A stretch of 64,000 nucleotides of DNA from Vitrella brassicaformis CCMP3155 (GCA_001179505.1 CDMY01000212.1:1-64000); one strand, 5' to 3'. Positions 10,874-33,909 are shown, counted from the first letter of the stretch. The notes: a model not told the origin generated them from the letters alone. Translations and numbers: made by a program.

Positions 10874-11776
10874 ATGGTGGGCGATAAGGGTGCGTTGCAA
10901 GCCCTTCTCAAAGGCGAAGACGGTTCCCATAGGTTCAAAATCTATTGTCTTGCATTGCTGCTTTCTTTATCTCTTGTTCTGTGGACGTTTTGGGACAACT
11001 CCTTTTTGGAAGTCCCGGTCCATCTCTCTAGGCTACTCAGGCTCCCACCATCGGGCAATCTCACGAACAGCTGCGGATTCAGTCACGAGTCTGAATCCAT
11101 GCCGGATGCGATACGTCGTGGGTACGTGATGACTCTGCCTGAGGCTGATGGCGAACCCGGACGTTACTCTCGCTTTTTGAGGGAGTGGACAGCCGCATAT
11201 CCCGCACTCGATATGCAGCAAATCAAGACGTTCCGGGCGCCCAGACGAGGGCTGGGAATCCTTGCCGGCAACATCCACGCGGTCGATCGTGCTATCGAAG
11301 ACAACGTTGACACGGCAATCTTTCTCGAAGATGATGCGAAACCCTTCAAGCCTGTCGATGCAGAGACATGGAAGGCACAATTCGACAAGCTTCTGATGCG
11401 ATGGCCCAATAACTCCATGGCTCTGTTCTTGGGCGCACACAATATCAGGCCTCATAGAGTGGATCCAAAGAAGCTGAGTCGTTCTCCGGAACTCCTTGAG
11501 TCCGGTATCATACGCGCGGACGATGCATGGGGCGCGTATGCATATGTGGTGCGAAAATCGCATCTTCGTTGCCTTTCGAAGTACCTCAGGGACTTGGTCG
11601 CTCAGGATAGCAGAGCTTATAGCCACGACGCCGTTTGGTGGAAGGGACTATTTAAGACTGAGACGCCGGCGTATGTGTCAGCCCCACTGCTCGTCGACCA
11701 TCATCCTGGCTTCTCGATGACTTGGGGGAGAAATCGGAGTGATGCTTGGATGGGGAAGAGACAGTGGTGGAAGTAA
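10874..11776 (+). CDS. GT25-like glycosyltransferase, intronless, type II membrane anchor (copy 1)
   Basis: 300-aa ORF with an N-terminal hydrophobic anchor, AIFLEDDA (EDD motif) and WGAYAYVV, typical of family 25 glycosyltransferases. Confidence 0.75.
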   Translation: MVGDKGALQALLKGEDGSHRFKIYCLALLLSLSLVLWTFWDNSFLEVPVHLSRLLRLPPSGNLTNSCGFSHESESMPDAIRRGYVMTLPEADGEPGRYSRFLREWTAAYPALDMQQIKTFRAPRRGLGILAGNIHAVDRAIEDNVDTAIFLEDDAKPFKPVDAETWKAQFDKLLMRWPNNSMALFLGAHNIRPHRVDPKKLSRSPELLESGIIRADDAWGAYAYVVRKSHLRCLSKYLRDLVAQDSRAYSHDAVWWKGLFKTETPAYVSAPLLVDHHPGFSMTWGRNRSDAWMGKRQWWK

Positions 11777-13330
11777 AAAGAAACAGTCCAGTTTTCTTGT
11801 TGTTGGGCCTTCACTTTGCCCCTTCATTACTTCATAAGGGTGTTGCAGCACTCTGTATGGATGAGAGACCATATCCATGAAGGCAAGCCATGACAAGATG
11901 ACTCCTCATGTCAATTTAATTCATTTGTCAATAGATTCATGATATCACTATTCAATGTGAGGCAATTCACCTCGCTTCTGCTGGTTCAGTTTTTTATGTC
12001 ACCCGCTTGTCGTCTGGGACAAGAGGAAGAGAAAGGAGGATGACAGCAGGCATACACCATTTGTCATCATCGTCGAGACATGATGGTGTCACGTATCCAT
12101 TTTTTGTACGAACGCCGACAAGAGCTACCTGTTCATCCCACTCTTGTCTCTCTTGGCTAGACATCGGCTAGTGCTTGTTTTGGATGGAAACCCTACTTTG
12201 TTGGCCTCATTCGCCACACATAACCTTGGAAAAGGTGTGGGAAACATCTCAAAATCGACGAAGTGACAAAAGAGACGGAAATGATCGCATGACATCTGCG
12301 AATGCTCAGCCGGTGCCCAAGTGTCAGCTGAAAAAAGTCAGATATCACGCTTTTTACTGAGTCTCACTCACGGCCCCTTGGTTTCTGTAGGCAGCTGTTG
12401 AGATGTCTGGATGGTGCAACTCATGTTGTCTGCCTTCGGCGGTCTCGACAGCAGCTGGCGTCGGTGGTGCAGGACGAGGTTCAGCCAGCCGCCGCAGCCG
12501 GGTATGTGAAATCCAGGGGTAGTCAAGGGAATCTTGGTGAGCCGGACCCCTCCCTGGTCACTGCAGGATGTCCAGTACTCGCGACCAAATGAATGCCCTG
12601 TGTGCTCATGAGGACGCTCAAATGAATGAACGTCCCCAGCTTTTCTCCCGTCCCAAATTATCGAAGAGAAACGCATGGGTTTCTCTGCTTTTGAGGGTCT
12701 TTTCACACACGGTAACTTCTGTTTGTCTCAATCTTCCCCCTCCTCCCATCATGTATCGTAAGCACAGGTCTGCAAAAAAGACCTGCCACTTGGGATGTGC
12801 GCGACATCAAAATAAGGAAAGGCAGGTACAGGGCGCGGCAGGTAGGAAAAGGCGATTGGAAGGGAAGCGTGAAGAGAAGCACGAAGAGAGACAGACTGGG
12901 ATAGAGGGATGGAGGGACGGCCAAGAAAGACACAATATGAATGCTACACCACCGGTATCCCACCGCTATTGGTCATCACGTACCCACGACGTATCGCACC
13001 CCTGCCTTCCCCTCCCCTCCCCTCCCCTCACAGCCATCCATCAGCCCACCCATCGCGTCGCGCGAGCGACGCGATTTGATGATCATTTCGACTGATGCAT
13101 TCACTGCTGCGGGCGGGGGGCCGGCATGATTTATGTGATTTGCTTGCTGTCATGCCTGCTGTTCACGCCTTTGTGCCGTCACGGACCCACTGGACATCAT
13201 GTTGATGACTCCTCTTCCATGCAAACCAGCTTGTGGAGATCAAGGGTGAATCAGACTCAGGAGACACTCAGGCTCACTGCGAAGGGTTTCGCAGTCACGT
13301 CGACAGGCGGATTGAATGAGTGAATGGCTG

Positions 13331-13470
13331 GTTTTTCGTCGTTTCAGAGTGGTTTTGAGGGGGAAAACAGCTCTGGTGAGTCATTCACGGCGAGAAACCC
13401 CGCAGAAAACAAGGAGAAGATAAACCAATCGCTCGCTTGCGAATATAAACCAACCAAAAGTCTAAGCAAT
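13331..13470. repeat. Dispersed repeat, related copy at 17701-17880
   Basis: Shared GTTTTTCGTCGTTT.AGAGT...GCTCTGGTGAGTCATTCACGGCGAGAAACCCCGCAGAAAACAAG. Confidence 0.85.
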
Positions 13471-13726
13471 CAGCCCTGCTGACCGCATTCATGTGTTGCG
13501 GGAATGCATCTTCATGCGTCGTTCGATGAGTTCGATCACATAGCAGGCACAAAAGTCCGTTTCACGCTGAGAAAAAGTCCGTTTGCCAAGAAAGCGAATT
13601 CTTGCGAAGCCGTGACCACCACCCCACACACATCGACCTCACGACCGAGTCCCGAGACCCAGAAACACATATGTACGCTCTAGTTGCTCTGCTTTCCTTT
13701 GTCACCGTTCTTTGCGTTTTTCATTG

Positions 13727-14856
13727 CTATAAAGATGGCTTTGTCGCCTTCGGCCTCGTTGAAGTCTGATGGGAAATAAAGAAGTGGGATCCGAAGCAAT
13801 GACGTGTATTCAGCCTCTTTGCGGCCACTTGTTCACCTTGGATTTGTGCCATCTGTTTGTCCTTATCGAGATCCTTCCGGAGAATGAACGTGTCAGCCCC
13901 CGGCCCTCCGATCATCGTGTCACCGAAATCTCCATCCAAGTCGGTGATCAGGTCGTCACCTGGGCAACGAAGCCACAAATGCAACTAGGCCCCACTGCAT
14001 CATAAGTATGTGTATATACCTGCACCCCCTTTGACTCGATCAGTGCCACTATTACCGGCCAGGTTGTCGTCACCCGGACCGCCATCCTGCCCGCCACCCA
14101 CGATCGGGAGAGAGCAGTGGCCTGTGCGTCTGCAGGTGAGCTGCTTTGGTCTGCCTCCTCACCACAAGGTCATTGCCATTGTCGGCATTTATGAAATCCT
14201 TCCCATCTCCTCCAAACAGACGATCATCCTGCATGCGCGACGGTGAACAGGGGAAAAACAAGCACGCTTATGCACCAGCAGTAACTGTGTGGCATACCCC
14301 AGATTGTCCAGTGACTTCATCATCCCCCGCTCCGCCTGAATGAACGTACGGAGTCGGATCATGGGAACGATCCCCTCAAGTGTGTGGAGACTGCAATCGA
14401 GAAGCGCTTACCGTCGACTGTATCGTCACCCGCCTGGCCCCGGAGGATCTGAATGTGTGTCACCAATACGTACACACACGGCCCCACCGTGAAATCAGTC
14501 AACGTTCGCCTAGCTTACGTCGTTTCCTTCTCCTCCAAATATCGCATCATCCCCTTTTTTGCCTCGCACGAGATCATCGCCGCCAAGCGCATACATGGTG
14601 TCCGCTAGGTCTGTCCCCTCGAGAGCTTTGTTTCTTGGGTATCCGCCTTTCGAAGCTTCGCCGTCGTCTCCCTCAGTCCCGACGAGGGGCGGCGCAGTGG
14701 TCCCTCCCTGGAGTCGCCGACGGAGGGACGGGTTACAGCTGGAAGGAAGAGCGCATGCCACCGCCACACCTGCCGAGGACAAGTTGCATTGAGCTCGAGG
14801 TTTCTTGAGTCTCATTCCTTCATTAGCTTACACAGAATAATCAGCCCAAAGCGCAT
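13727..14856 (-). CDS. Secreted RTX (hemolysin-type Ca2+-binding nonapeptide repeat) protein, multi-exon
   Basis: Splicing by eye gives signal peptide MRFGLIILCVAVACALP, then repeats GGDDLVRGKKGDDAIFGGEGND, GQAGDDTVDGGAGDDEVTGQSGDDRLFGGDGKD, GGPGDDNLAGNSGTD and GGPGADTFIL, ending DFNEAEGDKAIFI*. All introns are GT-AG. Confidence 0.8.
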
Positions 14857-16296: not shown

Positions 16297-16596
16297 NNNN
16301 NNNNNNNNNNNNNNNNNNNNNNNNNNNNNNNNNNNNNNNNNNNNNNNNNNNNNNNNNNNNNNNNNNNNNNNNNNNNNNNNNNNNNNNNNNNNNNNNNNNN
16401 NNNNNNNNNNNNNNNNNNNNNNNNNNNNNNNNNNNNNNNNNNNNNNNNNNNNNNNNNNNNNNNNNNNNNNNNNNNNNNNNNNNNNNNNNNNNNNNNNNNN
16501 NNNNNNNNNNNNNNNNNNNNNNNNNNNNNNNNNNNNNNNNNNNNNNNNNNNNNNNNNNNNNNNNNNNNNNNNNNNNNNNNNNNNNNNNNNNNNNNN
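16297..16596. other. Assembly gap (300 N)
   Basis: N run. Confidence 1.
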
Positions 16597-17900: not shown

Positions 17901-18696
17901 TCACACTGAGGTCAGCACCCGTATCAACAAGCACCTCAGATAATACCCCATTCACCCTCATCAGCACATATGTCTGCCAGCGTACAGTTCGCAAAAGCTC
18001 ACTGTGGTTCTCCTCCTGCTTCTGTGCATCTGTAGGAGCCCTATTGCTTCCACCACAGACTGCATTGACATACGCAGAGACTCCCTGACCATCCTCTCTC
18101 TTATCAGCCACTGGTGGGCCCAGTGCTGCTACACCGACGGCATGCGAAGAAGAAGGCGTCCCCTCTCTTCGCCCACCGTAATCGATGACATCCGAGGAAG
18201 AAGGCGTCCCCTCTTCTCGTCTGCCGCCATCGGGGTTTTTGGCGGAGCTAGCCCCGACCAGCTCCAGCCCTTCGTCAGTTGTCTCGGTGGATGCCCACTC
18301 ACCACCGGCAGTATCCGAGTCGTAGCCCTTATGTGAGACTCGCGCCAACCGACTGTCATTACCAGTGTCCGCTGATGCACCAGGGCGTGCCGTCATGCAC
18401 TGTCGCTTCGCCGATGCACCCCAAGGACCTACCGACCTGGACTGCAAGTTCTCGCCCAGTCCGCATCTGTCTGCGTCCCCCAGGCAATCCCTTGGCCCAG
18501 CCGCCGGGACAAAATTGTGGTCAGTATCTCTCGTATCGACAGCTATATTGGAATGGGGTTCCCTCTGTGCCTGCACACTCAGAGCGTCAGCCGAGCCTGT
18601 CTCCTTCAAAAATGATCTCTTCATCAAAGAATGCGCATGTAGGGCGTCGTGTGCCGATGCTGTGTCCTCTCGCCCGCCCTGAAGCGGAGGACTCAT
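17893..18696 (-). CDS. Retroelement pro frame (-1 relative to gag), truncated just after the aspartic protease active site
   Basis: The C-terminus VLVDTGADLSVIQ* carries the retropepsin DTGA motif. No RT, RNase H or integrase follows. Confidence 0.8.
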   Translation of the reverse strand: MSPPLQGGREDTASAHDALHAHSLMKRSFLKETGSADALSVQAQREPHSNIAVDTRDTDHNFVPAAGPRDCLGDADRCGLGENLQSRSVGPWGASAKRQCMTARPGASADTGNDSRLARVSHKGYDSDTAGGEWASTETTDEGLELVGASSAKNPDGGRREEGTPSSSDVIDYGGRREGTPSSSHAVGVAALGPPVADKREDGQGVSAYVNAVCGGSNRAPTDAQKQEENHSELLRTVRWQTYVLMRVNGVLSEVLVDTGADLSVIQ

Positions 18697-18705
18697 CCGT
18701 TTCCC
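18664..18705 (-). promoter_or_regulatory. -1 programmed ribosomal frameshift signal (G GGA AAC heptamer plus downstream hairpin)
   Basis: Minus strand: ctG GGA AAC in gag phase, a 6-nt spacer GGATGA, then GTCCTC-CGC-loop-GCG-A-GAGGAC. Confidence 0.7.
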
Positions 18706-20030
18706 AGCTGCGGGAGGTCAGGAGCAGGGAGCGCTTTAGCTTGAACAGTGTTTGCCCCTGTTAGTGTCGCTCCTCGCATTTGCTCAGGGGAAGGTGTCCA
18801 TCCCTTCGGTCGCTTTCTACATCGGGCCCACTTGTGTCCATAGATGCCGCAGTAGAGACATCTGCCTGGGAACTTTCCTGCCCACCTATTAGTCCTCTTG
18901 TCTGGGTCTTGTGTCTCTGCTCTCTCTTGTCTTCTGTGTCTGCCCGACGCATCGCGTTGCCCCTTCAGGTCGGCCACTTCCGCCTTGAGCTCATTAATGG
19001 ATGCAGTGAGAGAGTCCCGGCTCTCTGTCTCTTTCTGCTTGTCAATGCCATCTGCAGGTCTCCCACCGACCGCACCGATCTCAAATCGTGCACGTTTCGA
19101 CGGTCTTGTCCTCTCGGCATCGCTCTCGCCATCGTCGTCACCGTGGCCATTGCCGCGCTTGCGTGTCCGCAACAGCCATACCTCGGCACTCAGCCCGAGC
19201 TCCTTCACGGCGCTGAATGTGTGGGGGTCGTCGTCTTTGCGGTATATTTCGTCTTTCAGTCTAGGTAGCAGGCCATCGATGAATAACTCGACTGCCTCTC
19301 TTTCCGATTTCTGCGTCCGTGCCTTCTGGTAGATGTCGTTGAACTCATTGAACGCATCTTGGAACGATTGATCGGGCTTCTGTTGCCATGTCTTCATTTG
19401 CTCAGCTACGGCGATTGTCTGCGCCTGTTTCTGGCCAAACTCTTGAGCCAAGAAGTCCAAGAGCGTCTCCAGCTGTACGGCTTGGCTGTTGTCTCCCCAT
19501 CCTGCCTGTGTGCTCATCCATCGAGTGACGCGAGTGCGTGCAGTGCCCCGTAAGGCGCTCATGATGTATGGAAGTATCTGGCCTCCTTTCAGATGGTACA
19601 TGTTCTCAGCCGCCCTGACTTCAGCAATGAATGCCTCCACAGTATGCTCTGCGCCTCCATCGAACGACTGGATGGACACCGATGGTTTCTGTAGGCCGTT
19701 TGGTATATTCCAGGCATCTGGCTTCGACGGCAGCTCACTCAACTCTGCCTGCGACTGCGTCTGGCTTGAATGTGAGCTGCTTGCTTCGTGTGTCAGTGCA
19801 GGTCCTTCATCTGGCAGCACCACGATGTCGGTGGTGTCGCCACTGCGATTGTATGTTGGTGAGACATCAGCGTCTCTTTCACGCCTTGCATTCGCCACAC
19901 GCCGTGGCTGTCTCTTCATGGCTTTCTTGCCACGCTTCAGCACCTGCAGCGCACGCTTTCGTGTCAATCCGCTCTCCGCCCGTGCGGGAGGTGCTGATTC
20001 CGTGCTCAGACCGCTTCGTGTCCTCGCCAT
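18693..20030 (-). CDS. Ty3/Gypsy-like Gag with CCHC zinc knuckle
   Basis: 445-aa intronless ORF with a retrotransposon-gag-like core (WQQKPDQSFQDAFNEF...FIDGLLPRLK) and CLYCGIYGHKWARC (CX2CX4HX4C). Confidence 0.9.
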   Translation of the reverse strand: MARTRSGLSTESAPPARAESGLTRKRALQVLKRGKKAMKRQPRRVANARRERDADVSPTYNRSGDTTDIVVLPDEGPALTHEASSSHSSQTQSQAELSELPSKPDAWNIPNGLQKPSVSIQSFDGGAEHTVEAFIAEVRAAENMYHLKGGQILPYIMSALRGTARTRVTRWMSTQAGWGDNSQAVQLETLLDFLAQEFGQKQAQTIAVAEQMKTWQQKPDQSFQDAFNEFNDIYQKARTQKSEREAVELFIDGLLPRLKDEIYRKDDDPHTFSAVKELGLSAEVWLLRTRKRGNGHGDDDGESDAERTRPSKRARFEIGAVGGRPADGIDKQKETESRDSLTASINELKAEVADLKGQRDASGRHRRQERAETQDPDKRTNRWAGKFPGRCLYCGIYGHKWARCRKRPKGWTPSPEQMRGATLTGANTVQAKALPAPDLPQLGNG

Positions 20031-20461: not shown

Positions 20462-21329
20462 AAGAAAGGCTAGAATGATCACCGGAAGGGAAAACAAACG
20501 AAAGAACGCTCGTTTGTTGTAGATTGGTTAGTTCGTAGCCGAAAATCTGCTGAGCTCGCTCGATCTCCCTAGCAGCTCGCAAATGAGCGATGTGGAAATT
20601 CACATCGCCTTTTTGGCGAGCTTTTCCTTCCGTTTCTCCCCGCCCTAAGCACTGTGCGTACATGTGGGAGGATGGCTCGGGAGAGCCGTGTCCTTCCACT
20701 TTTATGCCAAACGCACCAACGAGGAAGCAACAGTGGCAGGAAGGCCGCGCACTGATGGATGGAACGACAATGGCGGCCCAGAGTCTTCCCTCCCTTCATC
20801 AGCGCAGCGGTATACATCTCGACATGCGCTCGGAAACCCCTTGATTCACTCCCATACTATTGATTGATACCAACTCATGCACCCTGCAACACGGCACAAC
20901 TGATGCACGTAGAGATCTCATGCAAGCGACATCAGCGACGCACACAGCCAGATGGTCGTCATGTGGAAGGCACGATGCCTCCTTGTTTGCCCTTGTTTAC
21001 CTGGCTTTGCCATTCTTTGCCATCGGGCAAGCGAGTGGGCCGTTTACCAAAAGCCTTCTTAACTTCGAGTGCGCAGCCACTTGAGGGTGTTCTTACATCT
21101 AGAGTGCGCAGCCACTTGACCGTGTTCGTATCCCCAGGAAGTTACGACCGAAGTCGCCTGATTCTTATGTAATGGATGTAATGGTAGGAGAGGAGGGGTA
21201 AGGGTGGATTTATTGCCTGCAGCAGACAGGCACGCACAAAGCACCACAGGCACGGGATGGATGAAAGCCTTCTTAAGGCCTGCCAACCATTGTCTTTTGC
21301 TTAGTCGTATTCTGGTCGACACCGACCAA

Positions 21330-21725
21330 TGCGAAGGCGAGGCGCGAAGCGCCGAGCCGAGCATCGACTAGCCACCCTTGACTGTCAATTGCCAATGTGG
21401 AGGGCACCGTTGACTGTTCTGCGACGGTTCCATCACTCACAGTCACCCCACTCCTCCGTGCATGCAGGGCCTCAACTAGTCTTTGATATACATGATCCAT
21501 CAGTTGGTCATGGGTGTCGTAGCTTGGCAGTCTGACAAAGGGTGGCTGTATCGCAGCTGCTGCGCCATCTTCAGTATCGTCCGAATCTCTCAAGTCGAGC
21601 GACTGTGGGGTTGGCGGGCGTCTCTTCCCACAAAGGTTCACAGTGGTTCGCAGCCAGCCAAAACGAGGGGGCATCAAAACCTCGGCTAGTGCAGCCGGAT
21701 TCAGGTTTTGACGTTCACAGGGTCA
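21330..21725. repeat. Dispersed repeat, inverted copy at about 31365-31810
   Basis: Reverse-complement match. Both copies read as similar short ORFs (MMPPRFGWLRT...DSDDTEDGAAAAIQ...VYQRLVEALHARRSG). Confidence 0.9.
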
Positions 21726-21891
21726 AGTACAGGGTTCCCGGTCGGTGGTGAAACTGAGGAACAACGGATGATGTAGCCCTCAACGGAATCATTCTATTCA
21801 ATTCCTGGGTGGAAACTCGCTAACGGTATTTGTATTATTATTTGGGAGGAGGGCACGTCTCATATGTCCGTTTTTTCTGTATGTATATTGT

Positions 21892-24313
21892 ATGTATATG
21901 CGGGTCGGCTTTTCATCACTGACCTGGTTCTCCGTCTTCCTGGTGTCCCTCAGCTTATGGTTCAATTTGTGGGGCGGACCTTCCACCAGCAACAACAGAA
22001 AGTTCATCACGGATGCCCTGATGCACCTTCGGATGAGAGCACAAGAGAAGGCGAGCATCACCAGGTTTCTTTCAAGTGGACAAGACGATAGCGCCTTCGC
22101 TGATCTGAGGGCGTTCGAGGCCGATCTCGAGGTGCCCTTCTTTATATTGGACACACCTGCGCTGGTGGAGCTTCATCGTATGTGCCAGGAGACTGCACAG
22201 AGCATTCTCAACGGCGACTGGCCTTCTGAGCTTGTTCTGGATGACAAGAAGAACATCAACGAGGTGTACTGGCTCCATCAATTGTGGACCGACCCCTGGC
22301 GGACACGCGACCCAGACAAAGCTCTCATCTTCGTCTTGCCTGTGTATCCAGGTGGGCACTGCATCGCAGATGGATCGCTGATAACACACGTAGGTGTGTA
22401 TGGAGTGTGGGCAGTGCTGTTGCTGGGGAGGGCGTGTGGGGAGAAGGATCGGAAGAAGGTCCACAAGCTGGGTGCACAGGCAGTTAAGGAGGTGAGAGAA
22501 AGCGTTCTTGTTAGAGGTGTCTTATTCGATGTCGGCCTTCGATTCAGGTGACCCAGCTGCCTGCCTGGCACAGGAATGGCGGCGTTGATCACGTGATGGT
22601 GGTGAGTATGCCGATGCATCAACCGCTGTATTCGTGTGATCATTTAATCAGGCGACTGACTGGCAGTTCAAGGTGCCTGGCGGCTTCCAGAGGGCGCTGG
22701 GCAAGACCTTCGCTAACTTTGCCAGGAACGTCACATGGGGGCGACACGTCACCGACAACCGTTCGTGCGGATAAAGAGAGGATCAGACTCTAGTGATGCA
22801 ATGCTCGAGTGTCCGCTGCTTCTCAGATAGAGGCCTCTTCGGCTGCGCCGTCACCATTCCCCATACGTACACATCCGTACATACCAGTCTGCGAGCACCA
22901 TGTGTGTATCTGCCTGTCCGTGTGGCTGTGTGGGTCTGCAGGTCGTCGATGACGGCGCTACAGCCTGCCTACCAGCCCTTTGAAAAGGAGAGTCTGCTGG
23001 AGAGGGGTCTGATCGACGCCGCGGATGTGTTCGAGGATGACAGGCTTGATGTTGCATTCGACCCGCCCTCGCGGCTCGACTGGTTTGCCAGAGACTACAC
23101 CATGTTCTTCCAAGGTAGCTCCCCTCACGTATTTGCAAACGTGCTTTTCTGATCAAGGCAGTTTGCATACAAATATGCTCAACATACGCCACACACACAT
23201 GATGTCTGCATGTGTGAGTGTGTCCAGGTACAGTTGATGGCATGCGGCCGTTCAGAATACTGGCACTGAAGCAGTTGGCGGGCTGGCACCACCGTCCAGC
23301 CTCATGTCACGACTGCACACCCGCCAACAATGTTTTCGTCTCCACCACCAACGTGGCTGGTGTCGAGCGGAAAGGGAAAATGCCAGATTGCCCGCGCGAA
23401 CAGAAGAAGCTGCGCGTTCAGAGGGTCGTTCAGAGGGTCGAAATGGGCAAGTTCGAGGGGTGTCGCGCCCCTTCCGACCAGAAGAAGCGACATCCGCTCT
23501 ACGCGGAGGCATCATTCATGCATCGGCTTGCAAATTCCAAAGTAAACCTCTGCTTCCGCGGGACAGATGTGACGAGTTCGAGGAATGTGGACGGCTTCTG
23601 GACGGGGACGCTCAACGTGCTGATTACCGAAGTGGAAGACATGTATAAGTACGCCATAGCGTTTCAATGCGAGATACCGTGGAGGTGACCACTTTAGCAT
23701 CAAACCAAAGACACGCACTCGCACACGTCATGCAGCAGCTGCATGATTATTCTGCATGGGAGGAGAATGAGGCAGAGACATGTCTGTCGCGTGTGTGTAC
23801 GTGTGCAGGAACTTCACATATGCCATCGAGGGCTCTGCGTTCAAGGAGGATCCGCGAAGAGCACTTAGGCCTGTCTTAGACGAGCTGTTTCTGCACCCTG
23901 CGTCCATCCGTGAGAAGCTTCGACTGATGGAGTACTACAGTAGGAAAGTGCTGTGGAACGCACCCAACAGCACAGCGGCCAGGAGCACGCTGCGCGCCAT
24001 GACGCGACAGTGCCTCACTGACGAGATGAAAATGGAATGGCTGCAGCGAACACACATAGAAGATGGTGAGTGGTCTGACCTGATTCACGGTATGAGGTGT
24101 GTGTGCGTGGGTTGGATGGATGCAGGTGGTGATCGATATGGCGATCATCCACTCTTCTCTCGCTGCGCCTTCCCGGACACCTCAGCGACGCGCGAGGAGC
24201 AGAGAGAGCCGTGCGTCAGCTGCTGGGTTGGCTACAAGACACCCACCAAGAAGCCGCCCTCCACAGCCGACGAACACCACACCACCAGTGCACAACTGGA
24301 GGTGCAGATGTGA
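21892..24313 (+). CDS. Exostosin-family (GT47) glycosyltransferase, multi-exon
   Basis: N-terminal TM anchor; WRTRDPDKALIFVLP, PAWHRNGGVDHVMV and SKVNLCFRGTDVTSSRNVDGFWTGTLNVLI...IPW match exostosin motifs. Introns are GT-AG. Confidence 0.85.
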
Positions 24314-24780: not shown

Positions 24781-26179
24781 TTAGAAACGACTGTAGTTCT
24801 TAATAAGGGGTACCAAGAGCTCATCAACCCTGCCGACATTGTTCCCGTCCTCGTCAACTACAATGGCATTCGACTTGACCTTTCTAAAGAACAGGGGGTG
24901 TCTGCTGCTAATCAATTCCGCCAACTTGGTGAGTTTTAGCTTATGGAAACACAGTGGCCCCAGTGGTGAGCAACGCCGAGCGCTCCCGTAGCCGCAGGCA
25001 TCTCTTGAGCCTTTCCAGCAGAGGCGGGTATCGCAGAATTCTTCTTGGATGTCTGGATCAAGCTGTCCAACGTGGTCAGTGCGGAGGCCGCCGTTTACCT
25101 GTAATGCATGAACATGTGAGGACGCCTCTGACCGTGAAACATAGCTGCCTACTTGTCTCCATATCTCTCGGTTGCCAAGTGTACGGCGAAGAACATGGTG
25201 TGGAAACCATTCATCGGACATTCCTGTCATCTTGCCGGATCGGCGTCGTGGCGCACGGTGAGAACGTGTACGATCAAGGCCCTGTGCGGCCACAATTGTC
25301 GCATGATATCGATTGTAGATTCGCCACTGCATGTGCTTGACATCTACACACAAAAATGACGGGAGATATTGCTGCACTTCCTTTCCGCCTGTAAGATACC
25401 ATATCCATCCCTTTCCGCATCTTGACACGTCAGGTTCTGGCTCCCTGCTTCGTCTGCCACTTCTCGGTCGGGTTCCATCTCCCACAGTCGACGTGGATTG
25501 TAGCTGAGTACAGCATAAAACGTAAACCCGACTGGCTACACGTCTATCCTTCATACCAGAATCTGGATGTCGGCAGACCACTTTCGCTCACTCGATGCTC
25601 AAACAAAACGTCATACAACACGTCAGGATGAGCCAGCGGGATGTGCGAAACACTCAACAGTGCCATCATTTGGTTGCACGGGTCATTCAGAGAGGCTTCC
25701 CACAACGAATTCTCGGCCGCAATGAATTCGCCATATTTCATCCGAGCCGGTTTGGCGTGTTTGGTTCGCTTTGACGCAGTCACTCCACTCACATTGTGAT
25801 GCAAATGGACGTATACAGCGAACCGTTGCCTGTCGCTGGCCAGGGCGAGCCACTCCTCCCACAAAGGAGCGAAAGGCTCCTTGTCCTTTACAAGAAATAG
25901 TAGAGCAACTTTTGGTGGCCCATTACAATCGCTGCAGCCTCCGATAGCAGCTGGCTTGCTTGATTTCCTCACACAATAAAATTGCAAAGGCGAATCTGTT
26001 GTCTTGAGGGGCACAAAATGCCTTTCTCTAAACTCCTCCAGCTGAGATTGTAGCTGACAGTCCCGATCCCTCTTCGACAACAGGAATCGGTGGTCGAAGT
26101 CGGAGTCGAGGAAGACCAGACACCCTGGCAACGCCAGGACCAGCGCTGAAGCCGTCAGCGCGAGAAGGGATAACCTCAT
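24781..26179 (-). CDS. Core-2/I-branching-like (GT14-related) glycosyltransferase, multi-exon
   Basis: KVALLFL...PLWEEW...FAVYVH, YGEFIAAENSLWEASLNDPCNQMMALLSVSHIPL, KHMQWRIYNRYHA, SDEWFPHHVL and LFFRKV follow the Branch-family motif order. There is an N-terminal anchor. Confidence 0.8.
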
Positions 26180-26312
26180 GACAGCTATACACACGTAAGC
26201 TACACACAATTTGCGTTCACACAATATGCGTTACACACAAGATACAAGTAACAACTTACAATTTGCGTTCACCCCTTGCTTGCGTACTAATCGGAACCGG
26301 GCACTGCCCCCA
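26180..26312. promoter_or_regulatory. Short divergent (bidirectional) promoter between the GT14-like and GT43 genes
   Basis: 133 bp lie between the opposed ATGs, and AATTTGCGTTCAC occurs twice. Confidence 0.55.
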
Positions 26313-27572
26313 ATGGGTTATGTCATTCCTGCAATTCTGCTGGTGGTTTTTATCTTGTGGCATAAACTGGACAGCGTCAGCCTTCTCCTGAACGGCACCA
26401 AGCACCCCAGCTTACGGCGGAGTCAGCGTGGGGCTGAAGTGCTATGCAGCCCGACAAATTCATTGACGGGCCACACCTTTCGTGAGTCAGCGTCACCCTC
26501 CCTCTTCCCAAGCAGCCGATGGGTACCTGGGCTGCGGTGGGTGTTTGTCGTGACGCCGACGTACAGACGTGTGACGCAGCGTCTTGACCTTACGCGGCTT
26601 TTCAATACATTCGCTCTGTTCGCTAACGTGCACGTGATAGTTGTGGAAGACAGCCTCAACAGAACGGCCAAGGTTGACAACATATTGGGGAGCAGCCTCC
26701 TACTGCATTGGTCACACAGGTGAGTGCCACGTGGCATGACCTCCCATGGTGGAATACGTTTGGGAGGCTTCGCTGGGTCCCTCGCTGTCCAGGTATATCA
26801 AAAGTTCTCGTAGATTGAAAGTCAGGGGGAGCGAGCAGAGGAATGAGGGCATTCGCGCGATACGAGAAATCGTGTTCGGTGAGGCGGACGCAGAGCTCAG
26901 GAACGCATATGAGGTAAACTGAAGTTAAGACTTCAACAGCCGTCGTGTCTCTTCCTAACTTTCAGGATGCCGTCGTGTATTTTGCTGATGACGACAACGC
27001 ATATGACGTTCGGATCCTGGACGAACTGCGGAAGGTCCGTAATGTTGGCACCTGGCCGGTTGCGCTCTCGGGGCGTAAGATCGCCGAGAGATGCGAAGTC
27101 GACACGTCAACGGGAAGGATCAAAGGCTATAACTCTGCCCTGGTGGGTGTCAACTCGAGAGCCAGAAAGAGGAGGTGCTGGAGCGATAATGCTCATCTCT
27201 CTTCGATGTATGTGCGGTGTGTGCGTGTGTGAGTGGGTAAAGAAATGGCGTCCGTATCCGATTGACACTGCAGGGTATGGCCTGCACGTGAGGTACTTCC
27301 TCAAACACGAGCCGCCATTGATGTTCAACCCCCTTAGCAAGATCTACCACCTCGAAAGCGACTTCCTGAAGATGACGAATATCAGCAAATACGATTTTGA
27401 GCCACTCGCGGACAATTGCACAAAGGTACTTGGACAGCTTATGCAGAGGCTACACACTCAAGTGCATGTCAACTTGCTACGCCGCCAGGTGTACACCTGG
27501 CACGTGTCTTCGGACATAAAGTGGGGTAGGAAGAAGCCGCCGCTAGACTTCGACGTGGAGCTTGACATCTAG
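26313..27572 (+). CDS. GT43 glycosyltransferase (B3GAT/GlcAT-I or IRX9/14-like), multi-exon
   Basis: VVTPTY..., VIVVED, QRNEGIR, VVYFADDDNAYD (DDD motif), VGTWPV, YPIDTAG, LESDFL and NCTKV..WH are GT43 hallmarks. Confidence 0.92.
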
Positions 27573-28526
27573 AAAGCCGGGCATGTATTCACGACACACA
27601 GACTTTCTGGCATTCTGCACGTGTCTGGACACTTCTGTGGCTGTGGGAGGCTGCCGGACATGTCAGCATGCTCCCAAAAGCACTACATCTGTCAGAAAGA
27701 AGGGACACAGCGCACTTTCCCTCCTGTGGGAGTGGATGACGATCAACAGTACGCAACGTTGAACCAGTGTTCTCTTATGCCAATCTCCCCTGGGTTCATG
27801 ATCAGTGATGGTGCCTTTTTGTATAACTACTCCCCCCCTTATCACCCCTGTCCAGCTGGCAAAGTACTATGGGCAAACCCCCCACCCCTGCTTCCTCCCA
27901 CCGAATACTGCTCGTCCGCCCACAAATACGTGTTGGATATGCAGGTAAGACTTAGAACACGCACCATTTTGAGCATGTCTCCAGCTCATTCTCAGTGAAG
28001 TTCTCAGTGGAATGACGCTTCGCTGATAAAGGGAGGGAGGTGTTTTCGCAGCGCCTGACCTCACTCCGGTAGCTAGACGGGCATCCTATTGCATTGCATT
28101 GCATTGGATGGTACTCATTCTGAGGACTCGACGTTGGGAACTGTGTGCGGGTCGCTTTCACCCACTGCATGACGGAGCCATCTGTATCTGTCTGTGTAGC
28201 TAGAGGTGCGTGCGAGTGTATGAGACCCATATCTATTCAGGCAGCGCACACATCGAAGACGGAGGGAGGGAGGGAGGGAGGGAGAGAGGGTTGGTGGATT
28301 GCTCTCTCTTTCCGCTCTCCCTCTCTGTGTATTAGGTAGTGCATCGTACATGTTGGTAGGGGTGCGCAGTCGTCGACCAGTGATGAAACCGATTCTTTTA
28401 TGTAAACCATCTGTTCGTCTGTGTGTGCCTGTGAGTGTACGTGACCCCACAGCGAATCAGATCAATCGACACACATCCATCAGTCTGACGACCGTCACTT
28501 CATCGACTGAGTCCATTAGACATACA

Positions 28527-28560
<34 letters not shown>

Positions 28561-29817: not shown

Positions 29818-30723
29818 TTACTTCCACCACTGTCTCTTCCCCATCCAAGCATCACTCCGATTCCTCCCCCAAGTCACCGAGAAGCCAGGATGACGGTCGA
29901 CGAGCAGTGGGGCTGCCACATACCCCGGCGTCTCAGTCTTAAATAGTCCCTTCCACCAAACGGCGTCGTGGCCATAAGCTCTGCTATCCTGAGCAATCAG
30001 ATCCCTGAGGTACTTCGAAAGGCAACGAAGATGTGATTTTCGCACCACATAAGCATACGCGCCCCATGCATCGTCCGCGCGTATGATACCGGGCTCAAGG
30101 AGTTCCGGAGAACGACTCAGCTTCTTTGGATCCACTCTATGAGGCCTGATATTGTGTGCGCCCAAGAAGAGAGCCATGGAGTTATTGGGCCACCGCAAAA
30201 GAAGCTTGTCGAATTGTGCCTTCCATGTCTCTGCATCGACAGGCTCGAAGGGTGGTTTCGCATCATCTTCGAGAAAGATTGCCGTGTCAACGTTGTCTTC
30301 GATAGCACGATCGACCGCGTGGATGTTGCCGGCAAGGATTCCCAGCCCTCGTCTGGGCGCCCGGAACGTCTTGATTTGCTGCATATCGAGTGCGGGATAT
30401 GCGGCTGTCCACTCCCTCAAAAAGCGAGAGTAACGTCCGGGTTCGCCATCAGCCTCAGGCAGCGTCATCACGTACCCACGACGTATCGCATCCGGCATGG
30501 ATTCAGACTCGTGGCTGAATCCGCAGCTGTTCGTGAAGTTGCCCGATGGTGGGAGCCTAAATAGCCTAGAGAGATGGACCGAGACTTCCAAAAAGGAGTT
30601 GTCCCAAAACGTCCACAGAACAAGAGATAAAGAAAGCAGCAAAGCAAGACAATAGATTTTGAACCTATGGGAACCGTCTTCGCCTTTGAGAAGGGCTTGC
30701 AACGCACCTTTATCGCCCACCAT
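29818..30723 (-). CDS. GT25-like glycosyltransferase, intronless (copy 2, inverted relative to copy 1)
   Basis: Near-identical to 10874-11776, with about a dozen amino-acid differences counted by eye and one extra codon. The 3' flank is also shared. Confidence 0.75.
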   Translation of the reverse strand: MVGDKGALQALLKGEDGSHRFKIYCLALLLSLSLVLWTFWDNSFLEVSVHLSRLFRLPPSGNFTNSCGFSHESESMPDAIRRGYVMTLPEADGEPGRYSRFLREWTAAYPALDMQQIKTFRAPRRGLGILAGNIHAVDRAIEDNVDTAIFLEDDAKPPFEPVDAETWKAQFDKLLLRWPNNSMALFLGAHNIRPHRVDPKKLSRSPELLEPGIIRADDAWGAYAYVVRKSHLRCLSKYLRDLIAQDSRAYGHDAVWWKGLFKTETPGYVAAPLLVDRHPGFSVTWGRNRSDAWMGKRQWWK

Positions 30724-31364
30724 ACGTATTCGTACCAATATTTATGATTGTATATTATTTCACCAATTCGATATCTGAGAGGGATTGGAGCGCGAAGGCC
30801 GATTGACCATCCAATTGGCTCTCGGGCTGGCCGACCGGAGGCCGCACAGGGTGCATAGATGGTCGGAGCGAGGGAAGCGCAGACCTTCCTTCTTCTGCTC
30901 TGCTCACGCTCAGCCCGATATAGAAGAGCCTTTCCAGGACAGCCACGTCCCTGCAGAAGAACACAAGAGTTGCACATCTCGATATCCGTAAGCCACGAAC
31001 ACGCTTGCATGCATACGGGGCAACCCGGGATTCTCACATAGCGCGTGGCAACCCGGTACCCTCACACATCACGCGGGGCAGCCCGGCAATTAGACTGAGA
31101 AACGAGGCGACGGAGGGTGTGCATGCAGCTCATTTCTTATTGCGGGAGGGGGAGGGGGAAGGGGGGAGGGAGACAGGAAGGAGGGAGGGGAAGAGAGACA
31201 GACCACCTGACACGACAAGAGAGACGGGGGCCACACACATCACCACACACACACACACAGGGCAGAGGGGGGGAGGAAGGAGGGGAGGTAGACAGATGGA
31301 CACATCATGAGTTTGGTGCTTTCTTTGCTCTGCCGTTCGTACGTCAAAAACCTCTGGGTCAGCT

Positions 31365-31810
31365 TTTAACCCTGTGAACGTCAAAACCTGAACCCGGCTG
31401 CACTGGCCGAGGTTTTGATGCCCCCTCGTTTTGGCTGGCTGCGAACGTTAACCACTGTGAGCCTTTGTGGAAAGAGACGCTCGCCAACCCCACTCCATTT
31501 GAGAGATTCGGACGATACTGAAGATGGCGCAGCAGCTGCGATACAGCTACCTTTTGTCAGATTGCCAAGCCATGACACCCATGGGTGTCATGGCCTCTTG
31601 CTAGCCATGCCATGCCATGACACCCATCAGAGGGCCAACATGCATGTATATCAAAGACTAGTTGAGGCCCTGCATGCACGGAGGAGTGGGGTGACTGTGA
31701 GTGATGCGACCGTCGCAGAACAGTCAGCGGTGCCCTCCACATTGGCAATTGACAGTCAACGGTACCCCCGCTCGGCGCTTCGCGCCTCGACTGCATTGGT
31801 CGGTGAGTCG
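31365..31810. repeat. Inverted copy of 21330-21725 containing a 26-bp perfect palindrome
   Basis: Reverse-complement match. GCCATGACACCCATGGGTGTCATGGC lies at 31569-31594. Confidence 0.9.
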
Positions 31811-32483
31811 ACATGCATCAGCGACCCTCGTGGCATGAGCTGGCAAGAGGTGCATCATGCACGAGGGTCGCTGAGGAACACTGGTGACCGCCACTGCGTG
31901 TACCATTGCCTGCCTGTGGTCAGGGGCGCTGTCCCCCCCAAGGAGACGTCCAGGCCTCTTGGACGCTGTCTCACCAAAGACAGAACAGTCGGTTTTGGAG
32001 GATTGTTTTTTGAGACGGCAACAGTTCACCCATGGGAATACAGCCGACAGTGCTGAATGCTGCCGCTATCAAGACGCGATTAGAATGATTCCCAAACAAT
32101 GGCAGCATTCTTTTAGAGGTCTTCGAGATGCTCATATCACTACTCCCCGCTCGACAAGATACAAAATACCGTAGCACACGTCATCCATCCATTGACACTG
32201 CCCAGGGTTTGCATGCATGAATCCCGTGGAGCATGCATCCACGTACGTACACGGACAGATACCCGCAAAGCAAACCACGCATGGGACCGCAGCAAAACAC
32301 GCGGACAGACAGAGACAAGGGATGGATCCCATTAATTGCCCCACCCAACCACCCCCACCACGCCTCCGCTCGTTTGTCTAGCTGGTCAGCAGGTATGTGT
32401 CACGCATCCACAATCGGACAGGAAAGGGAAAGAGATCGGCGATGGTAAGACAGAAGGACCTGGTGTCCACTTGATGCCCACAT

Positions 32484-33581
32484 TCACCTCTTTGGAAACA
32501 AGGGCCACGGAAAGGCTGCAAACAGTGCACGGTAATCAAAGTCGACAACTGGAGGCATCGGTCCCATGTCCAATGCTTCTTGGTACGAGGTCGCTAGCTG
32601 AAAACTCCGATTCGTTGCATAATAGTAATCCTTGTACTTGTGAAGCCGTCCATTCGAGTTTGTCTCCAACATCAGCCGCGAAGGAATCCCAAATGATTCA
32701 GCAATGATCAACCCATGCAGTGACGAGCTCACGACAAACGCGCACTTGACCAGCTCGCCCAGCACTACCTTCCAGTCCTGCATCGGTGTGATCACGTGAC
32801 CGGGATACTCGGATTCATTGAGGCCCCGGCGAATCTCCTTAATTTGAGGGACATAACAAACATCGTATTTGGGTGGCCAGTGAAGTTTGAATTCGGGGAA
32901 AAGACATGGTACGAGCATGCCCGCATCGCCATACACCACAGGCAGAGCCTCCACATCACCATGTTTATTCTGCAGCAAAAAGCTTCGTGTCTCGGGACCT
33001 CGAATGGCAAACAGAGTCACATTGCTTGGGAGCGGTCGCCTGAGCGTCTGTTCGCCCAGCATTCCAATCGACCAGCCGTAATCGCCAGAGCGGACAAAAT
33101 GCAGTACAGAGCCAATGGGAAGTAAACACTTTCCTCCTCGACGGCTTCGCAGGTTTCGCCACGGAAGTTGGAAGCGGCGACCGAGCATTCTCTCAACCAG
33201 AGCCAGCCCAATGTCATCGCCGAAATTCTTTTCGTTGGAGTATGTGCAGACGGCAAATCCCAAATCAAGTGGGAGGGATATGCATGAGGCATTTGCCAGT
33301 GACTCTTCGAGGCCTGGCACCTGGACACTCTGGCGCACACACCCTGGAATCGGTGCCGAGGATGCTCCTGGGACGCCTGTGTCTGGCGTAGCTTTGGAAC
33401 CCTCACTGAACCTGTTCGTAAAATTGCCGAGTACTGACGATCTGAATAAAAGAGGGAGAGGGACCGGCGATATGAGATACCGCAGCTCCTCCCGAAAACA
33501 CAATGTCCACAGGACAAGAACCGAAGCAGACAGCAGAGTAAAACAGTAAGACAAAGACAGCATCAGCATGTTGTCTGCCAT
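32484..33581 (-). CDS. Polysaccharide pyruvyltransferase-family (ExoV-like) protein, intronless, with N-terminal membrane anchor
   Basis: NFGDDIG, IGSVL, AIRGPET, YGDAG and VVSSSLHGLIIAESFGIP match the pyruvyltransferase fold. The start could be 33602 or 33581. Confidence 0.85.
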   Translation of the reverse strand: MADNMLMLSLSYCFTLLSASVLVLWTLCFREELRYLISPVPLPLLFRSSVLGNFTNRFSEGSKATPDTGVPGASSAPIPGCVRQSVQVPGLEESLANASCISLPLDLGFAVCTYSNEKNFGDDIGLALVERMLGRRFQLPWRNLRSRRGGKCLLPIGSVLHFVRSGDYGWSIGMLGEQTLRRPLPSNVTLFAIRGPETRSFLLQNKHGDVEALPVVYGDAGMLVPCLFPEFKLHWPPKYDVCYVPQIKEIRRGLNESEYPGHVITPMQDWKVVLGELVKCAFVVSSSLHGLIIAESFGIPSRLMLETNSNGRLHKYKDYYYATNRSFQLATSYQEALDMGPMPPVVDFDYRALFAAFPWPLFPKR

Positions 33582-33909
33582 TCCTGTCTGTACATAAAGC
33601 ACTGATGACCACTCTACAGTGCTTTATGTACCGCCAGAAGGCGACCGTTAACGCACAGACTTCCTTCAGCTTTGACTTGATATTTGTGTGAGCGTCTGTG
33701 AAGCAGCATCTCGAAGACCTCTCAAAAAGATGCTGCCATTGTTTGGGAATCATTCTAATCCCGTCTTGATAATGGCTGAAATTCAGCGATGAGTAGGAAT
33801 AGCACAGTGCACTCCCAACCAGTAACACGTCATGACATTTCGTCTCAAGCGTGGTGGACGGAAATCAGCATTGAAGATTCGCCCATCCATATAGAACGCT
33901 GCCGTCTCT

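What the first reader, a model, noticed from the sequence alone, without database searches (positions are those of the whole stretch)
10874..33602. Candidate eukaryotic glycan-biosynthesis gene cluster (GT47, GT14-like, GT43, GT25-like x2, pyruvyltransferase)
Seen: six glycan-modifying genes from five unrelated families. Five lie within about 12 kb (21.9-33.6 kb) and a second GT25-like copy is at 10.9 kb. All carry N-terminal membrane anchors. Established: GT43 plus GT47 build xylan backbones in plants and glycosaminoglycan linkers/chains in animals, Branch/GT14 enzymes add branches, and pyruvyltransferases cap glycans in bacteria and fission yeast. Inference: these genes may jointly make one pyruvylated wall, cyst or extracellular polysaccharide. 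Unrelated families co-located like this are not explained by tandem duplication, and I do not know of such a cluster in alveolates.
Basis: partly seen in the sequence, partly recalled or inferred. Interest (0 to 1): 0.85.

Follow-up and report, generated by a model that had tools for sequence, protein, structure and literature searches.

The report
Sugar-enzyme gene neighbourhood in Vitrella
Six genes for five unrelated kinds of sugar-chain-building enzymes really do sit side by side in the coral-associated alga Vitrella brassicaformis, and parts of this arrangement recur elsewhere in its genome, but nothing yet shows that they build one pyruvate-capped polymer together.

Summary
The window is Vitrella brassicaformis CCMP3155, contig CDMY01000212.1.

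- **Families confirmed by Pfam:** GT47 (21892-24313 +), GT14/Branch (24781-26179 -), GT43 (26313-27572 +) and a pyruvyltransferase (32484-33581 -).
- **The two 'GT25-like' genes** (10874-11776 +, 29818-30723 -) get no Pfam hit. They model as a GT-A fold closest to GT25, and they are inverted duplicates, about 94% identical in DNA.
- **Expression:** spliced RNA contigs from four runs show GT47, GT14 and GT43 transcribed, and give longer gene models than GenBank's. GT25-like copy a is also transcribed. Copy b and the pyruvyltransferase are unannotated and their expression is untested.
- **Gap:** the 16297-16596 gap touches none of the genes.
- **Not simple chance:** GT47 next to GT14 recurs on another contig in the same layout with equal divergence (about 50%). 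GT47 next to GT43 recurs on a third contig. GT14 and GT43 share a divergent promoter.
- **Against a fixed unit:** four other GT47 paralogues have no such neighbours.
- **Pyruvyltransferase:** its catalytic domain is closest to bacterial enzymes. Its membrane anchor and stem resemble those of the GT25-like genes.

A single pyruvylated product remains unproven. The scan has noted similar neighbourhoods elsewhere in this genome (s1-226914, s1-218522, s1-231044).

The parts
10874..11776 (+). GT25-like glycosyltransferase, copy a. Single exon, 300 aa, with an N-terminal anchor and an EDD motif at 152-154. Its transcript spans 10710-11995.
   Evidence: Three transcript-sized contigs from independent samples match 10710-11995 at 100%. 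Fold and feature evidence as for copy b.
16297..16596 (.). Assembly gap, a 300-N placeholder, between copy a and the core cluster. It lies in none of the six genes.
   Evidence: The flanks do not overlap. Continuity was not testable here.
21315..21726 (.). Repeat R1. An inverted copy lies at 31366-31812, 79% identical over 465 nt. The two copies bracket the core from GT47 to GT25-like copy b.
   Evidence: Self-BLAST. Its ORFs have no Pfam hit.
21892..24313 (+). GT47 (exostosin-type) gene: 9 exons, 604 aa, transcript 21851-24697. Exons: 21851-22348, 22412-22489, 22546-22600, 22651-22760, 22827-22866, 22942-23112, 23226-23682, 23807-24064, 24125-24697.
   Evidence: Eight GT..AG joints in spliced RNA contigs. 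Gene model. The GenBank product P0144 equals residues 44-604 of the model and scores 46.3 bits on Pfam PF03016.
24781..26179 (-). GT14/Branch gene: 4 exons, 411 aa, transcript 24734-26241. It lies tail to tail with GT47 (3' ends 36 nt apart) and head to head with GT43.
   Evidence: Three joints. Pfam Branch 29.6 bits. It is 49% identical to a Pfam-positive Branch gene beside a GT47 paralogue on another contig.
26313..27572 (+). GT43 gene: 5 exons, 323 aa, transcript from 26255. DDD motif at 184-186. Its start codon is 133 nt from that of GT14.
   Evidence: Four joints. Pfam PF03360 at 66 and 31.9 bits. Motif.
29818..30723 (-). GT25-like glycosyltransferase, copy b. Single exon, 301 aa, an intact ORF. 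Not annotated in GenBank, and expression is untested.
   Evidence: Inverted duplicate of copy a. The copies differ at 13 synonymous and 12 non-synonymous codons. GT-A fold closest to GT25. No gene is called here.
32484..33581 (-). Polysaccharide pyruvyltransferase. Single exon, 365 aa. Residues from about 115 to 365 form a bacterial-type catalytic domain. Residues 11-67 form an anchor and stem similar to the GT25-like N-terminus. Not annotated in GenBank.
   Evidence: Pfam PF04230 at 33 bits. It is 39-42% identical to bacterial enzymes, with the NFGD, GSxLH, RGPxT, YGD and SSLHG motifs kept. N-terminal similarity scores 84, z=12.9.
32052..32132 (.). 83-nt repeat. Its inverted partner lies at 33705-33787 (89% identical). 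The pair flanks the pyruvyltransferase gene.
   Evidence: Self-BLAST.

Best explanation
This is a real and non-random neighbourhood of Golgi-type (type II membrane) glycan-building enzymes in Vitrella brassicaformis.

Its core is a GT47-GT14-GT43 cassette. I think the three enzymes act in one pathway on a secreted or wall glycan. By analogy with plant xylan synthesis and animal glycosaminoglycan synthesis, that glycan would most likely be an acidic xylan-like or glycosaminoglycan/arabinogalactan-like chain. In this scheme GT43 and GT47 extend the chain and GT14 starts or branches it.

GT14 and GT43 are driven from one short divergent promoter. GT47 partner pairs have been copied as blocks within the genome.

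Beside the core lies a tailoring pair. One member is a GT25-like enzyme, probably a beta-galactosyltransferase. The other is a pyruvyltransferase of bacterial ancestry that carries a related membrane anchor and stem. The shared anchor could place the two enzymes in the same Golgi compartment, so that a galactose cap is added and then pyruvylated.

Shown: gene identities, splicing, transcription of four genes, the duplications, and the recurrence of the pairs. Inferred: the joint pathway, the sugars and the pyruvylated product.
For: - Families confirmed.
- GT47, GT14 and GT43 are spliced and present in all four RNA-type runs, which come from at least three studies.
- The 5' ends of the GT14 and GT43 transcripts are 13 nt apart and their start codons 133 nt apart.
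- Locus L020 has a GT47 paralogue on the + strand followed by a Branch gene on the - strand, the same layout as here. The divergence is matched: 50% for GT47 and 49% for GT14.
- Locus L001 has a GT47 paralogue next to GT43, with a PLOD-type glycosyltransferase and an arylsulfotransferase within 10 kb.
- The N-termini of the pyruvyltransferase and the GT25-like proteins are 47% identical over 53 residues; 0 of 300 shuffles reached the score.
- Catalytic motifs are intact: DDD in GT43, EDD invariant in the GT25-like family, and the pyruvyltransferase motifs.
- The two GT25-like copies differ by as many synonymous as non-synonymous codons (13 against 12). I estimate this gives dN/dS of about 0.3.
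- The wall of the sister species Chromera velia contains 4-linked and 2,4-linked xylose and several galactose linkages (PMC9293442).
Against: - No co-expression data. Contig depths cannot rank genes.
- The pyruvyltransferase and GT25-like copy b are not annotated, and no exact product is on record.
- Four of seven GT47 paralogue contexts show no neighbouring glycosyltransferase.
- The GT47 subfamily is a Vitrella-only expansion of about 15 genes. Its activity therefore cannot be read from plant or animal members.
- Nothing is known about pyruvate or uronic acids in chromerid walls.
- The region carries repeats and retroelement remnants, which favour shuffling without any functional reason.
Confidence: 0.45

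Rival explanations
1. Historical by-product. The genes are neighbours because new Golgi enzymes in this genome arise locally, by block duplication, inversion, and reuse of a neighbour's promoter and anchor module for a new catalytic domain. No shared pathway or co-regulation is being selected. Each enzyme serves its own glycan.
For: - Inverted duplication of the GT25-like gene, the R1 repeat pair, and the 83-nt inverted repeat around the pyruvyltransferase.
- A retroelement gag-like ORF lies at 18696-20039.
- An anchor and stem module is shared between a bacterial-type pyruvyltransferase and the GT25-like gene.
- All the families are lineage-specific expansions.
- Four of seven GT47 paralogues stand alone.
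- Earlier notes report an N-terminal module shared among neighbouring glycan enzymes elsewhere in this genome (s1-231044; not checked here).
Against: - The GT47-GT14 layout has been kept after about 50% protein divergence.
- GT47-GT43 adjacency occurs at two loci.
- The GT14/GT43 promoter arrangement is very tight.
- The same family set (GT47, GT43, GT14-like, GT25/PLOD-like) is reported on contig CDMY01000682.1.
Confidence: 0.4
2. The cluster is partly an artefact or decayed. GT25-like copy b and/or the pyruvyltransferase would be silent pseudogene-like copies, or one GT25-like copy would be a mis-joined allele. The real cluster would then be only GT47-GT14-GT43.
For: - No gene is called at 29.8-33.6 kb in GenBank.
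- Exact products are absent from the protein collection.
- Copy a sits 190 nt from a stretch that is a near-perfect inverted copy of 6344-7233 around another 300-N gap, which suggests local assembly trouble.
- Gap 16297-16596 separates copy a from the core.
Against: - Both ORFs are intact, at 301 and 365 codons, and keep their catalytic motifs.
- The two copies differ by about 6% in DNA with an excess of synonymous change per site.
- Copy a matches three independent transcript contigs at 100% and copy b does not, so they are distinct loci.
- The pyruvyltransferase has an expressed 71% paralogue, so the family is a genuine Vitrella family.
Confidence: 0.12
3. Foreign DNA: a bacterial contaminant or a giant-virus insertion that carries a glycosylation cluster.
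For: - The closest relatives of the pyruvyltransferase outside Vitrella are bacterial.
- The GT25-like model resembles Mimivirus R655 and virus-rich GT25 clusters.
Against: - Fifteen GT..AG spliceosomal introns occur in the three core genes.
- Transcripts are present in eukaryotic transcriptomes.
- Viral relatives of the pyruvyltransferase are only 23-28% identical, and no viral relative of the GT25-like protein was found.
- Base composition does not differ from the rest of the window.
- The window shares repeats with other Vitrella contigs.
Confidence: 0.03

Closest known systems
Plant xylan synthase set (IRX9/IRX14 of GT43 with IRX10 of GT47) and animal glycosaminoglycan machinery (XylT of GT14, GlcAT-I of GT43, EXT of GT47/GT64). 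From my own knowledge of these families.
   Same: The same three families of Golgi type II membrane enzymes occur together. GT43 keeps the DDD nucleotide-sugar/metal motif. Xylose linkages of the xylan type exist in the wall of the sister species Chromera (PMC9293442).
   Different: In plants and animals these genes are dispersed, not adjacent. The Vitrella GT47 belongs to a species-specific expansion whose C-terminal half is not recognised by Pfam. Donor and acceptor sugars cannot be inferred. No orthology to IRX or EXT genes was tested.
Fungal galactosaminoglycan biosynthetic cluster of Aspergillus fumigatus (five co-regulated genes). From my own knowledge.
   Same: It is a eukaryotic group of unrelated, adjacent genes for making and tailoring one extracellular polysaccharide.
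   Different: The enzyme set is entirely different. The fungal cluster has shown co-regulation and genetics, and here neither exists. The Vitrella locus shows block-duplicated enzyme pairs and anchor sharing, which the fungal cluster is not known for.
Bacterial polysaccharide pyruvyltransferases (Pfam PF04230; CsaB/WcaK/EpsO type) and fission-yeast Pvg1
   Same: The catalytic domain is 39-42% identical to bacterial family members and keeps their motifs. Like Pvg1, it would act in the secretory pathway behind a membrane anchor.
   Different: It carries an N-terminal anchor and stem of about 110 residues that bacterial enzymes lack, related to that of the neighbouring GT25-like gene. No PDB relative was found by sequence. 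The substrate is unknown.
GT25 galactosyltransferases (human COLGALT1; bacterial LgtB/Lic2B type; Mimivirus R655)
   Same: GT-A fold with best structural matches to these enzymes (Z 13.7 and 13.2) and an invariant EDD motif at the DxD position.
   Different: No Pfam PF01755 hit even at E<=5. Only four relatives were found in 5.8 billion proteins: the other copy in this window, two MMETSP transcripts (65% and 40% identical) and one amoebozoan, Gocevia fonbrunei. The margin over other GT-A families is only about 2 Z units.
Other glycosyltransferase neighbourhoods of the same genome noted by this scan (s1-226914 on CDMY01000682.1; s1-218522; s1-231044)
   Same: They show the same kind of side-by-side unrelated Golgi glycan enzymes. 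s1-226914 holds paralogues of the GT47 and GT43 genes of this window.
   Different: This locus adds a pyruvyltransferase and a GT25-like pair. It lacks the sulfotransferases and methyltransferases reported at those loci.

Membership tests
GT47 / Exostosin (Pfam PF03016) | Whole-protein score above Pfam's gathering cut-off (33.4 bits) | tested here: met
   P0144, the GenBank product of this gene, equals residues 44-604 of the RNA-based model and scores 46.3 bits, E=4.6e-12. The closest paralogue, P0132, scores 50.7 bits.
GT14 / Branch (Pfam PF02485) | Score above the gathering cut-off (23.4 bits) | tested here: met
   29.6 bits on the exon-1 ORF, covering profile positions 1-115 of 250 only. 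The later exons gave no hit as separate pieces. The spliced protein could not be submitted by reference. It is 49% identical to a Pfam-positive Branch gene in L020.
GT43 (Pfam PF03360) | Score above the cut-off (27 bits) and the DDD motif | tested here: met
   66 and 31.9 bits on two exon ORFs. DDD at residues 184-186 of the model. The GenBank model is also flagged PF03360.
Polysaccharide pyruvyltransferase (Pfam PF04230) | Score above the cut-off (25.3 bits) and conserved motifs across the catalytic domain | tested here: met
   33.1 bits. It aligns with bacterial members over residues from about 115 to 365, with N119, F120, G121, D122, G157, S158, R194, G195, P196 and T198 invariant.
Polysaccharide pyruvyltransferase (Pfam PF04230) | Transfer of pyruvate from PEP to a sugar as a ketal | not testable with these tools
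   Needs an enzyme assay or glycan NMR.
GT25 (Pfam PF01755) | Sequence-profile match to PF01755 | tested here: not met
   No family at E<=5 for either copy or for three relatives. The genes are therefore filed as 'GT25-like GT-A fold', not as members.
GT25 (Pfam PF01755) | GT-A fold closest to solved GT25 enzymes, with an acidic DxD-type motif | tested here: met
   COLGALT1 at Z 13.7, rmsd 3.3 over 173 aligned residues. Atlas fold matches to GT25 clusters at TM 0.54. EDD 152-154 is invariant. Model quality is moderate (pLDDT 60).
Biosynthetic gene cluster (functional sense) | Adjacent non-homologous genes | tested here: met
   Five families lie within 11.7 kb. I recognised no other gene between them, and GenBank calls none.
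Biosynthetic gene cluster (functional sense) | Co-regulation | tested here: inconclusive
   GT47, GT14 and GT43 are all present and spliced in four runs, and GT14 and GT43 are divergent with 5' ends 13 nt apart. There is no quantitative or stage-resolved data and nothing for the pyruvyltransferase or copy b.
Biosynthetic gene cluster (functional sense) | Linkage conserved beyond one locus | tested here: inconclusive
   Paralogous GT47-GT14 (L020) and GT47-GT43 (L001) pairs exist. Four other GT47 paralogues have no such neighbour. Synteny in other species could not be tested.
Biosynthetic gene cluster (functional sense) | Genes act in one pathway on one product | not testable with these tools
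   Needs genetics, enzymology and glycan analysis.

The most novel reading that the evidence does not exclude
Vitrella builds extracellular or wall polysaccharides from true eukaryotic polysaccharide loci that resemble bacterial EPS loci. A GT47-GT14-GT43 cassette would be copied as a unit and diversified. Tailoring enzymes captured from bacteria (here a pyruvyltransferase) would be plugged in by grafting a neighbour's Golgi anchor and stem, giving a pyruvylated acidic glycan not yet described in any alveolate.
Probability: 0.2. Interest if true: 0.8.

Novelty: new variant of a known kind. Interest (0 to 1): 0.5.

Why it matters
Genes for wall and matrix polysaccharides are usually scattered in eukaryotes, which makes pathways hard to assign. 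If the Vitrella neighbourhoods are functional units, they give ready-made hypotheses for which enzymes work together in chromerids, the closest photosynthetic relatives of apicomplexan parasites. Chromerid wall chemistry is barely known.

The locus also suggests a way that new Golgi enzymes arise: a foreign or duplicated catalytic domain is placed behind a neighbour's anchor module.

In practice the work corrects three GenBank gene models and adds two unannotated genes.

Tried and rejected
- **Exact-product look-ups.** Look-ups of the pyruvyltransferase and GT25-like copy b found nothing. This does not show silence, because GenBank did not call the genes and the collection is not exhaustive.
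- **Metagenome scans.** I ran two exact-pattern scans of metagenome contigs, one for the pyruvyltransferase and one positive control shared by both GT25-like copies. Both were blank. The control should have hit the transcriptome sample that holds copy a, so the collection evidently lacks that sample and the negative result means nothing.
- **Solved structures.** PDB sequence searches with the pyruvyltransferase and a GT47 exon gave nothing useful.
- **Giant viruses.** A viral origin is rejected: viral relatives are absent or only 23-28% identical.
- **Spliced proteins.** Spliced GT14 and GT43 proteins could not be submitted to Pfam, fold or homology tools, because they have no reference and I did not type long sequences. 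They were tested exon by exon and through paralogues.
- **Codon-usage scan.** A scan trained on the six genes was used only to look for further genes in the window. It is circular for the six genes themselves.
- **Genome-wide statistics.** No count of glycosyltransferases in Vitrella was found in the literature, so no proper clustering test could be made. Among 34 called neighbours of six GT47 paralogues, 3 were Pfam-recognisable glycosyltransferases. This sample is biased.
- **Gap.** Continuity across the 16297-16596 gap could not be tested.

Full report
**Source of the DNA.** The window has spliceosomal introns and about 54% G+C. Relatives of its GT47 gene are named Vitrella brassicaformis CCMP3155 by NCBI. 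The GenBank product of the window's own GT47 gene is P0144 (CEL94220.1). It lies on contig CDMY01000212.1 of assembly GCA_001179505.1, and contig coordinates equal window coordinates.

**Gaps.** The three gaps in the window are each exactly 300 N and their flanks do not overlap. The gap at 16297-16596 lies between GT25-like copy a and the five-gene core, inside none of the six genes. I could not test continuity across it. Only the linkage and distance of copy a depend on it.

**Gene models.** Contigs of four public runs lie on 21800-27700 with 15 clean GT..AG (or CT..AC) joints, so they are RNA assemblies. They give three spliced models:
- GT47: 9 exons, CDS 21892-24313, 604 aa.
- GT14: 4 exons on the minus strand, CDS 26179 down to 24781, 411 aa.
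- GT43: 5 exons, CDS 26313-27572, 323 aa.

These differ from GenBank in several ways:
- GenBank's GT47 model lacks the first 43 residues, which hold the hydrophobic N-terminus.
- Its GT14 model is cut to 241 aa.
- It calls no gene at all between 27.6 and 34.3 kb, so GT25-like copy b and the pyruvyltransferase are unannotated.

Some transcripts retain the last GT47 intron, which is 60 nt and in frame.

**Family checks.**
- GT43, Branch/GT14, PS_pyruv_trans and Exostosin_GT47 all pass Pfam's curated cut-offs.
- The Branch hit rests on exon 1 only. The whole protein is 49% identical to a Pfam-positive Branch gene elsewhere in the genome.
- The GT25-like genes fail Pfam PF01755 outright.
- They have only four relatives in 5.8 billion proteins. 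One of these is from the amoebozoan Gocevia.
- Their features point to GT25 clusters.
- A moderate-quality model (pLDDT 60, core 70-90) has a GT-A fold.
- That fold is closest to the catalytic domain of human COLGALT1 (Z 13.7) and to Mimivirus R655 (Z 13.2). Other GT-A families follow at Z of about 11.6.
- An EDD motif is invariant in the family.
- 'GT25-like' is therefore a fair label, but not a proven membership.

**Membrane anchors.** Five proteins have a clear N-terminal hydrophobic anchor. The anchor of GT47 is weaker.

**Local architecture.**
- The order is GT47 (+), GT14 (-), GT43 (+), then about 2.2 kb of low-complexity sequence, then GT25-like b (-) and the pyruvyltransferase (-).
- GT47 and GT14 are tail to tail, with transcript ends 36 nt apart.
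- GT14 and GT43 are head to head, with transcript 5' ends 13 nt apart and start codons 133 nt apart.
- The two GT25-like genes are an inverted duplication, 93.6% identical over 1038 nt.
- They differ at 13 synonymous and 12 non-synonymous codons, which by my estimate means purifying selection with dN/dS of about 0.3.
- Copy a matches three independent transcript contigs at 100% and copy b does not. They are therefore separate loci, and copy a is expressed.
- A 79%-identical repeat pair (21315-21726 and 31366-31812) and an 83-nt inverted repeat around the pyruvyltransferase (32052-32132 and 33705-33787) show a history of rearrangement.
- A gag-like ORF lies at 18696-20039.

**The pyruvyltransferase.**
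- Outside Vitrella its best relatives are bacterial polysaccharide pyruvyltransferases, 39-42% identical over the catalytic two thirds with the family motifs intact.
- Viral relatives are far weaker.
- A 71% paralogue (P0009) occurs in the same transcriptome sample that holds the exact transcript of copy a. The family is therefore truly Vitrella's.
- The first 110 or so residues have no bacterial counterpart.
- Residues 11-67 resemble residues 23-78 of the GT25-like proteins: 25 of 53 residues identical, score 84, z=12.9, and none of 300 shuffles reached the score. No other pair of the six proteins shows this.
- This confirms the separate note s1-233315. It suggests that a foreign catalytic domain was placed behind a local anchor and stem module.

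**Is the co-location more than chance?**
- I could not run a genome-wide test.
- The GT47 gene belongs to a Vitrella-only expansion. All 18 hits were from Vitrella or its transcriptomes, so glycosyltransferase genes are numerous here.
- I looked at six paralogue contexts. L020 has GT47 (+) followed by Branch (-), the same layout as the window. The divergence is matched at 50% and 49%, as expected if the pair was copied as a block and stayed linked.
- L001 has GT47 beside GT43, plus a PLOD-type glycosyltransferase and an arylsulfotransferase.
- L002, L009, L010 and L019 show no other glycosyltransferase by Pfam or tblastn.
- Earlier notes of this scan describe further glycosyltransferase-rich neighbourhoods in the genome. 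One of them (s1-226914) is the contig of L001.
- So clustering of unrelated glycan enzymes recurs in this genome, and this locus is one instance.

**Function.**
- Nothing here shows a common product.
- The wall of the sister species Chromera velia is mostly cellulose. It also holds 4- and 2,4-linked xylose and several galactose linkages, read as heteroxylans, galactans and others. Uronic acids and pyruvate are not among the residues reported (PMC9293442).
- A xylan-like or acidic chain made by GT43, GT47 and GT14, with a galactose cap that is pyruvylated, is a reasonable model by analogy with plant, animal and fission-yeast enzymes. Every step of it is inference.
- The main rival is that the neighbourhood only records how these genes were born, by local duplication and module reuse.
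- I put the functional reading at 0.45 and the by-product reading at 0.40.
- The remainder goes to partial decay or artefact (0.12) and foreign DNA (0.03). The introns and transcripts largely exclude foreign DNA.

**Literature.** Searches found no description of such clusters in chromerids or other alveolates.

Noticed in passing
window 6344-7233 and 9878-10687: The stretch around the 300-N gap at 10118-10417 is a near-perfect (98-100%) inverted copy of 6344-6613 and 6993-7233. It is probably an assembly artefact or a palindrome. It ends 190 nt before GT25-like copy a.
   Followed up: partly
window 32052-32132 and 33705-33787: An 83-nt inverted repeat (89% identical) brackets the single-exon pyruvyltransferase gene. 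It was not seen in about 100 kb of other Vitrella loci. It could mark a past insertion or inversion.
   Followed up: partly
window 33381-33551 (PvT residues 11-67) and 30490-30657 (GT25-like copy b residues 23-78): The pyruvyltransferase and the GT25-like proteins share a related anchor and stem (47% identity over 53 residues), although their catalytic domains are unrelated. This matches note s1-233315.
   Followed up: yes
window 26108-26179 (first 24 codons of GT14) and P0132 (contig CDMY01000206.1): The first 24 residues of GT14 are 71% identical to the N-terminus of a GT47 paralogue on another contig. This may be another shared anchor, but the segment is short and leucine/alanine-rich, so chance is possible.
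   Followed up: no
window 21892-27572 and 29818-33581: GenBank annotation problems: the GT47 model lacks 43 N-terminal residues, GT14 is truncated to 241 aa, GT43 has a different start, and GT25-like copy b and the pyruvyltransferase are not called.
   Followed up: yes
window 24065-24124: The last GT47 intron (60 nt, in frame) is retained in some transcript assemblies (protein P0141). This adds 20 residues near the C-terminus.
   Followed up: partly
window 13680-14856 (-): GenBank calls a 230-aa gene here with RTX-type calcium-binding repeats (HemolysinCabind). This is a bacterial-style repeat in a eukaryotic gene.
   Followed up: no
window 18696-20039 (-) and 33895-34872 (+): A gag-like ORF with a zinc knuckle (Pfam Retrotrans_gag at 19.3 bits, below the cut-off) lies at 18696-20039. 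At 33895-34872 are further ORFs with coding-like codon use but no Pfam hit, which might be mobile-element remnants. The two stretches flank the core.
   Followed up: partly
window 54389-59642: A block of dispersed and tandem repeats, 71-97% identical, several hundred nt each.
   Followed up: no
window 46428-47393 (+) and 53563-54162 (+): Ordinary genes elsewhere in the window: an alanine dehydrogenase/transhydrogenase-type N-domain (126 bits) and a signal peptidase S26 (50 bits).
   Followed up: partly
window 21800-27700: Marine sediment metagenome runs hold up to 39% of the sampled words of this stretch. Vitrella or a very close relative may therefore occur in sediments.
   Followed up: no
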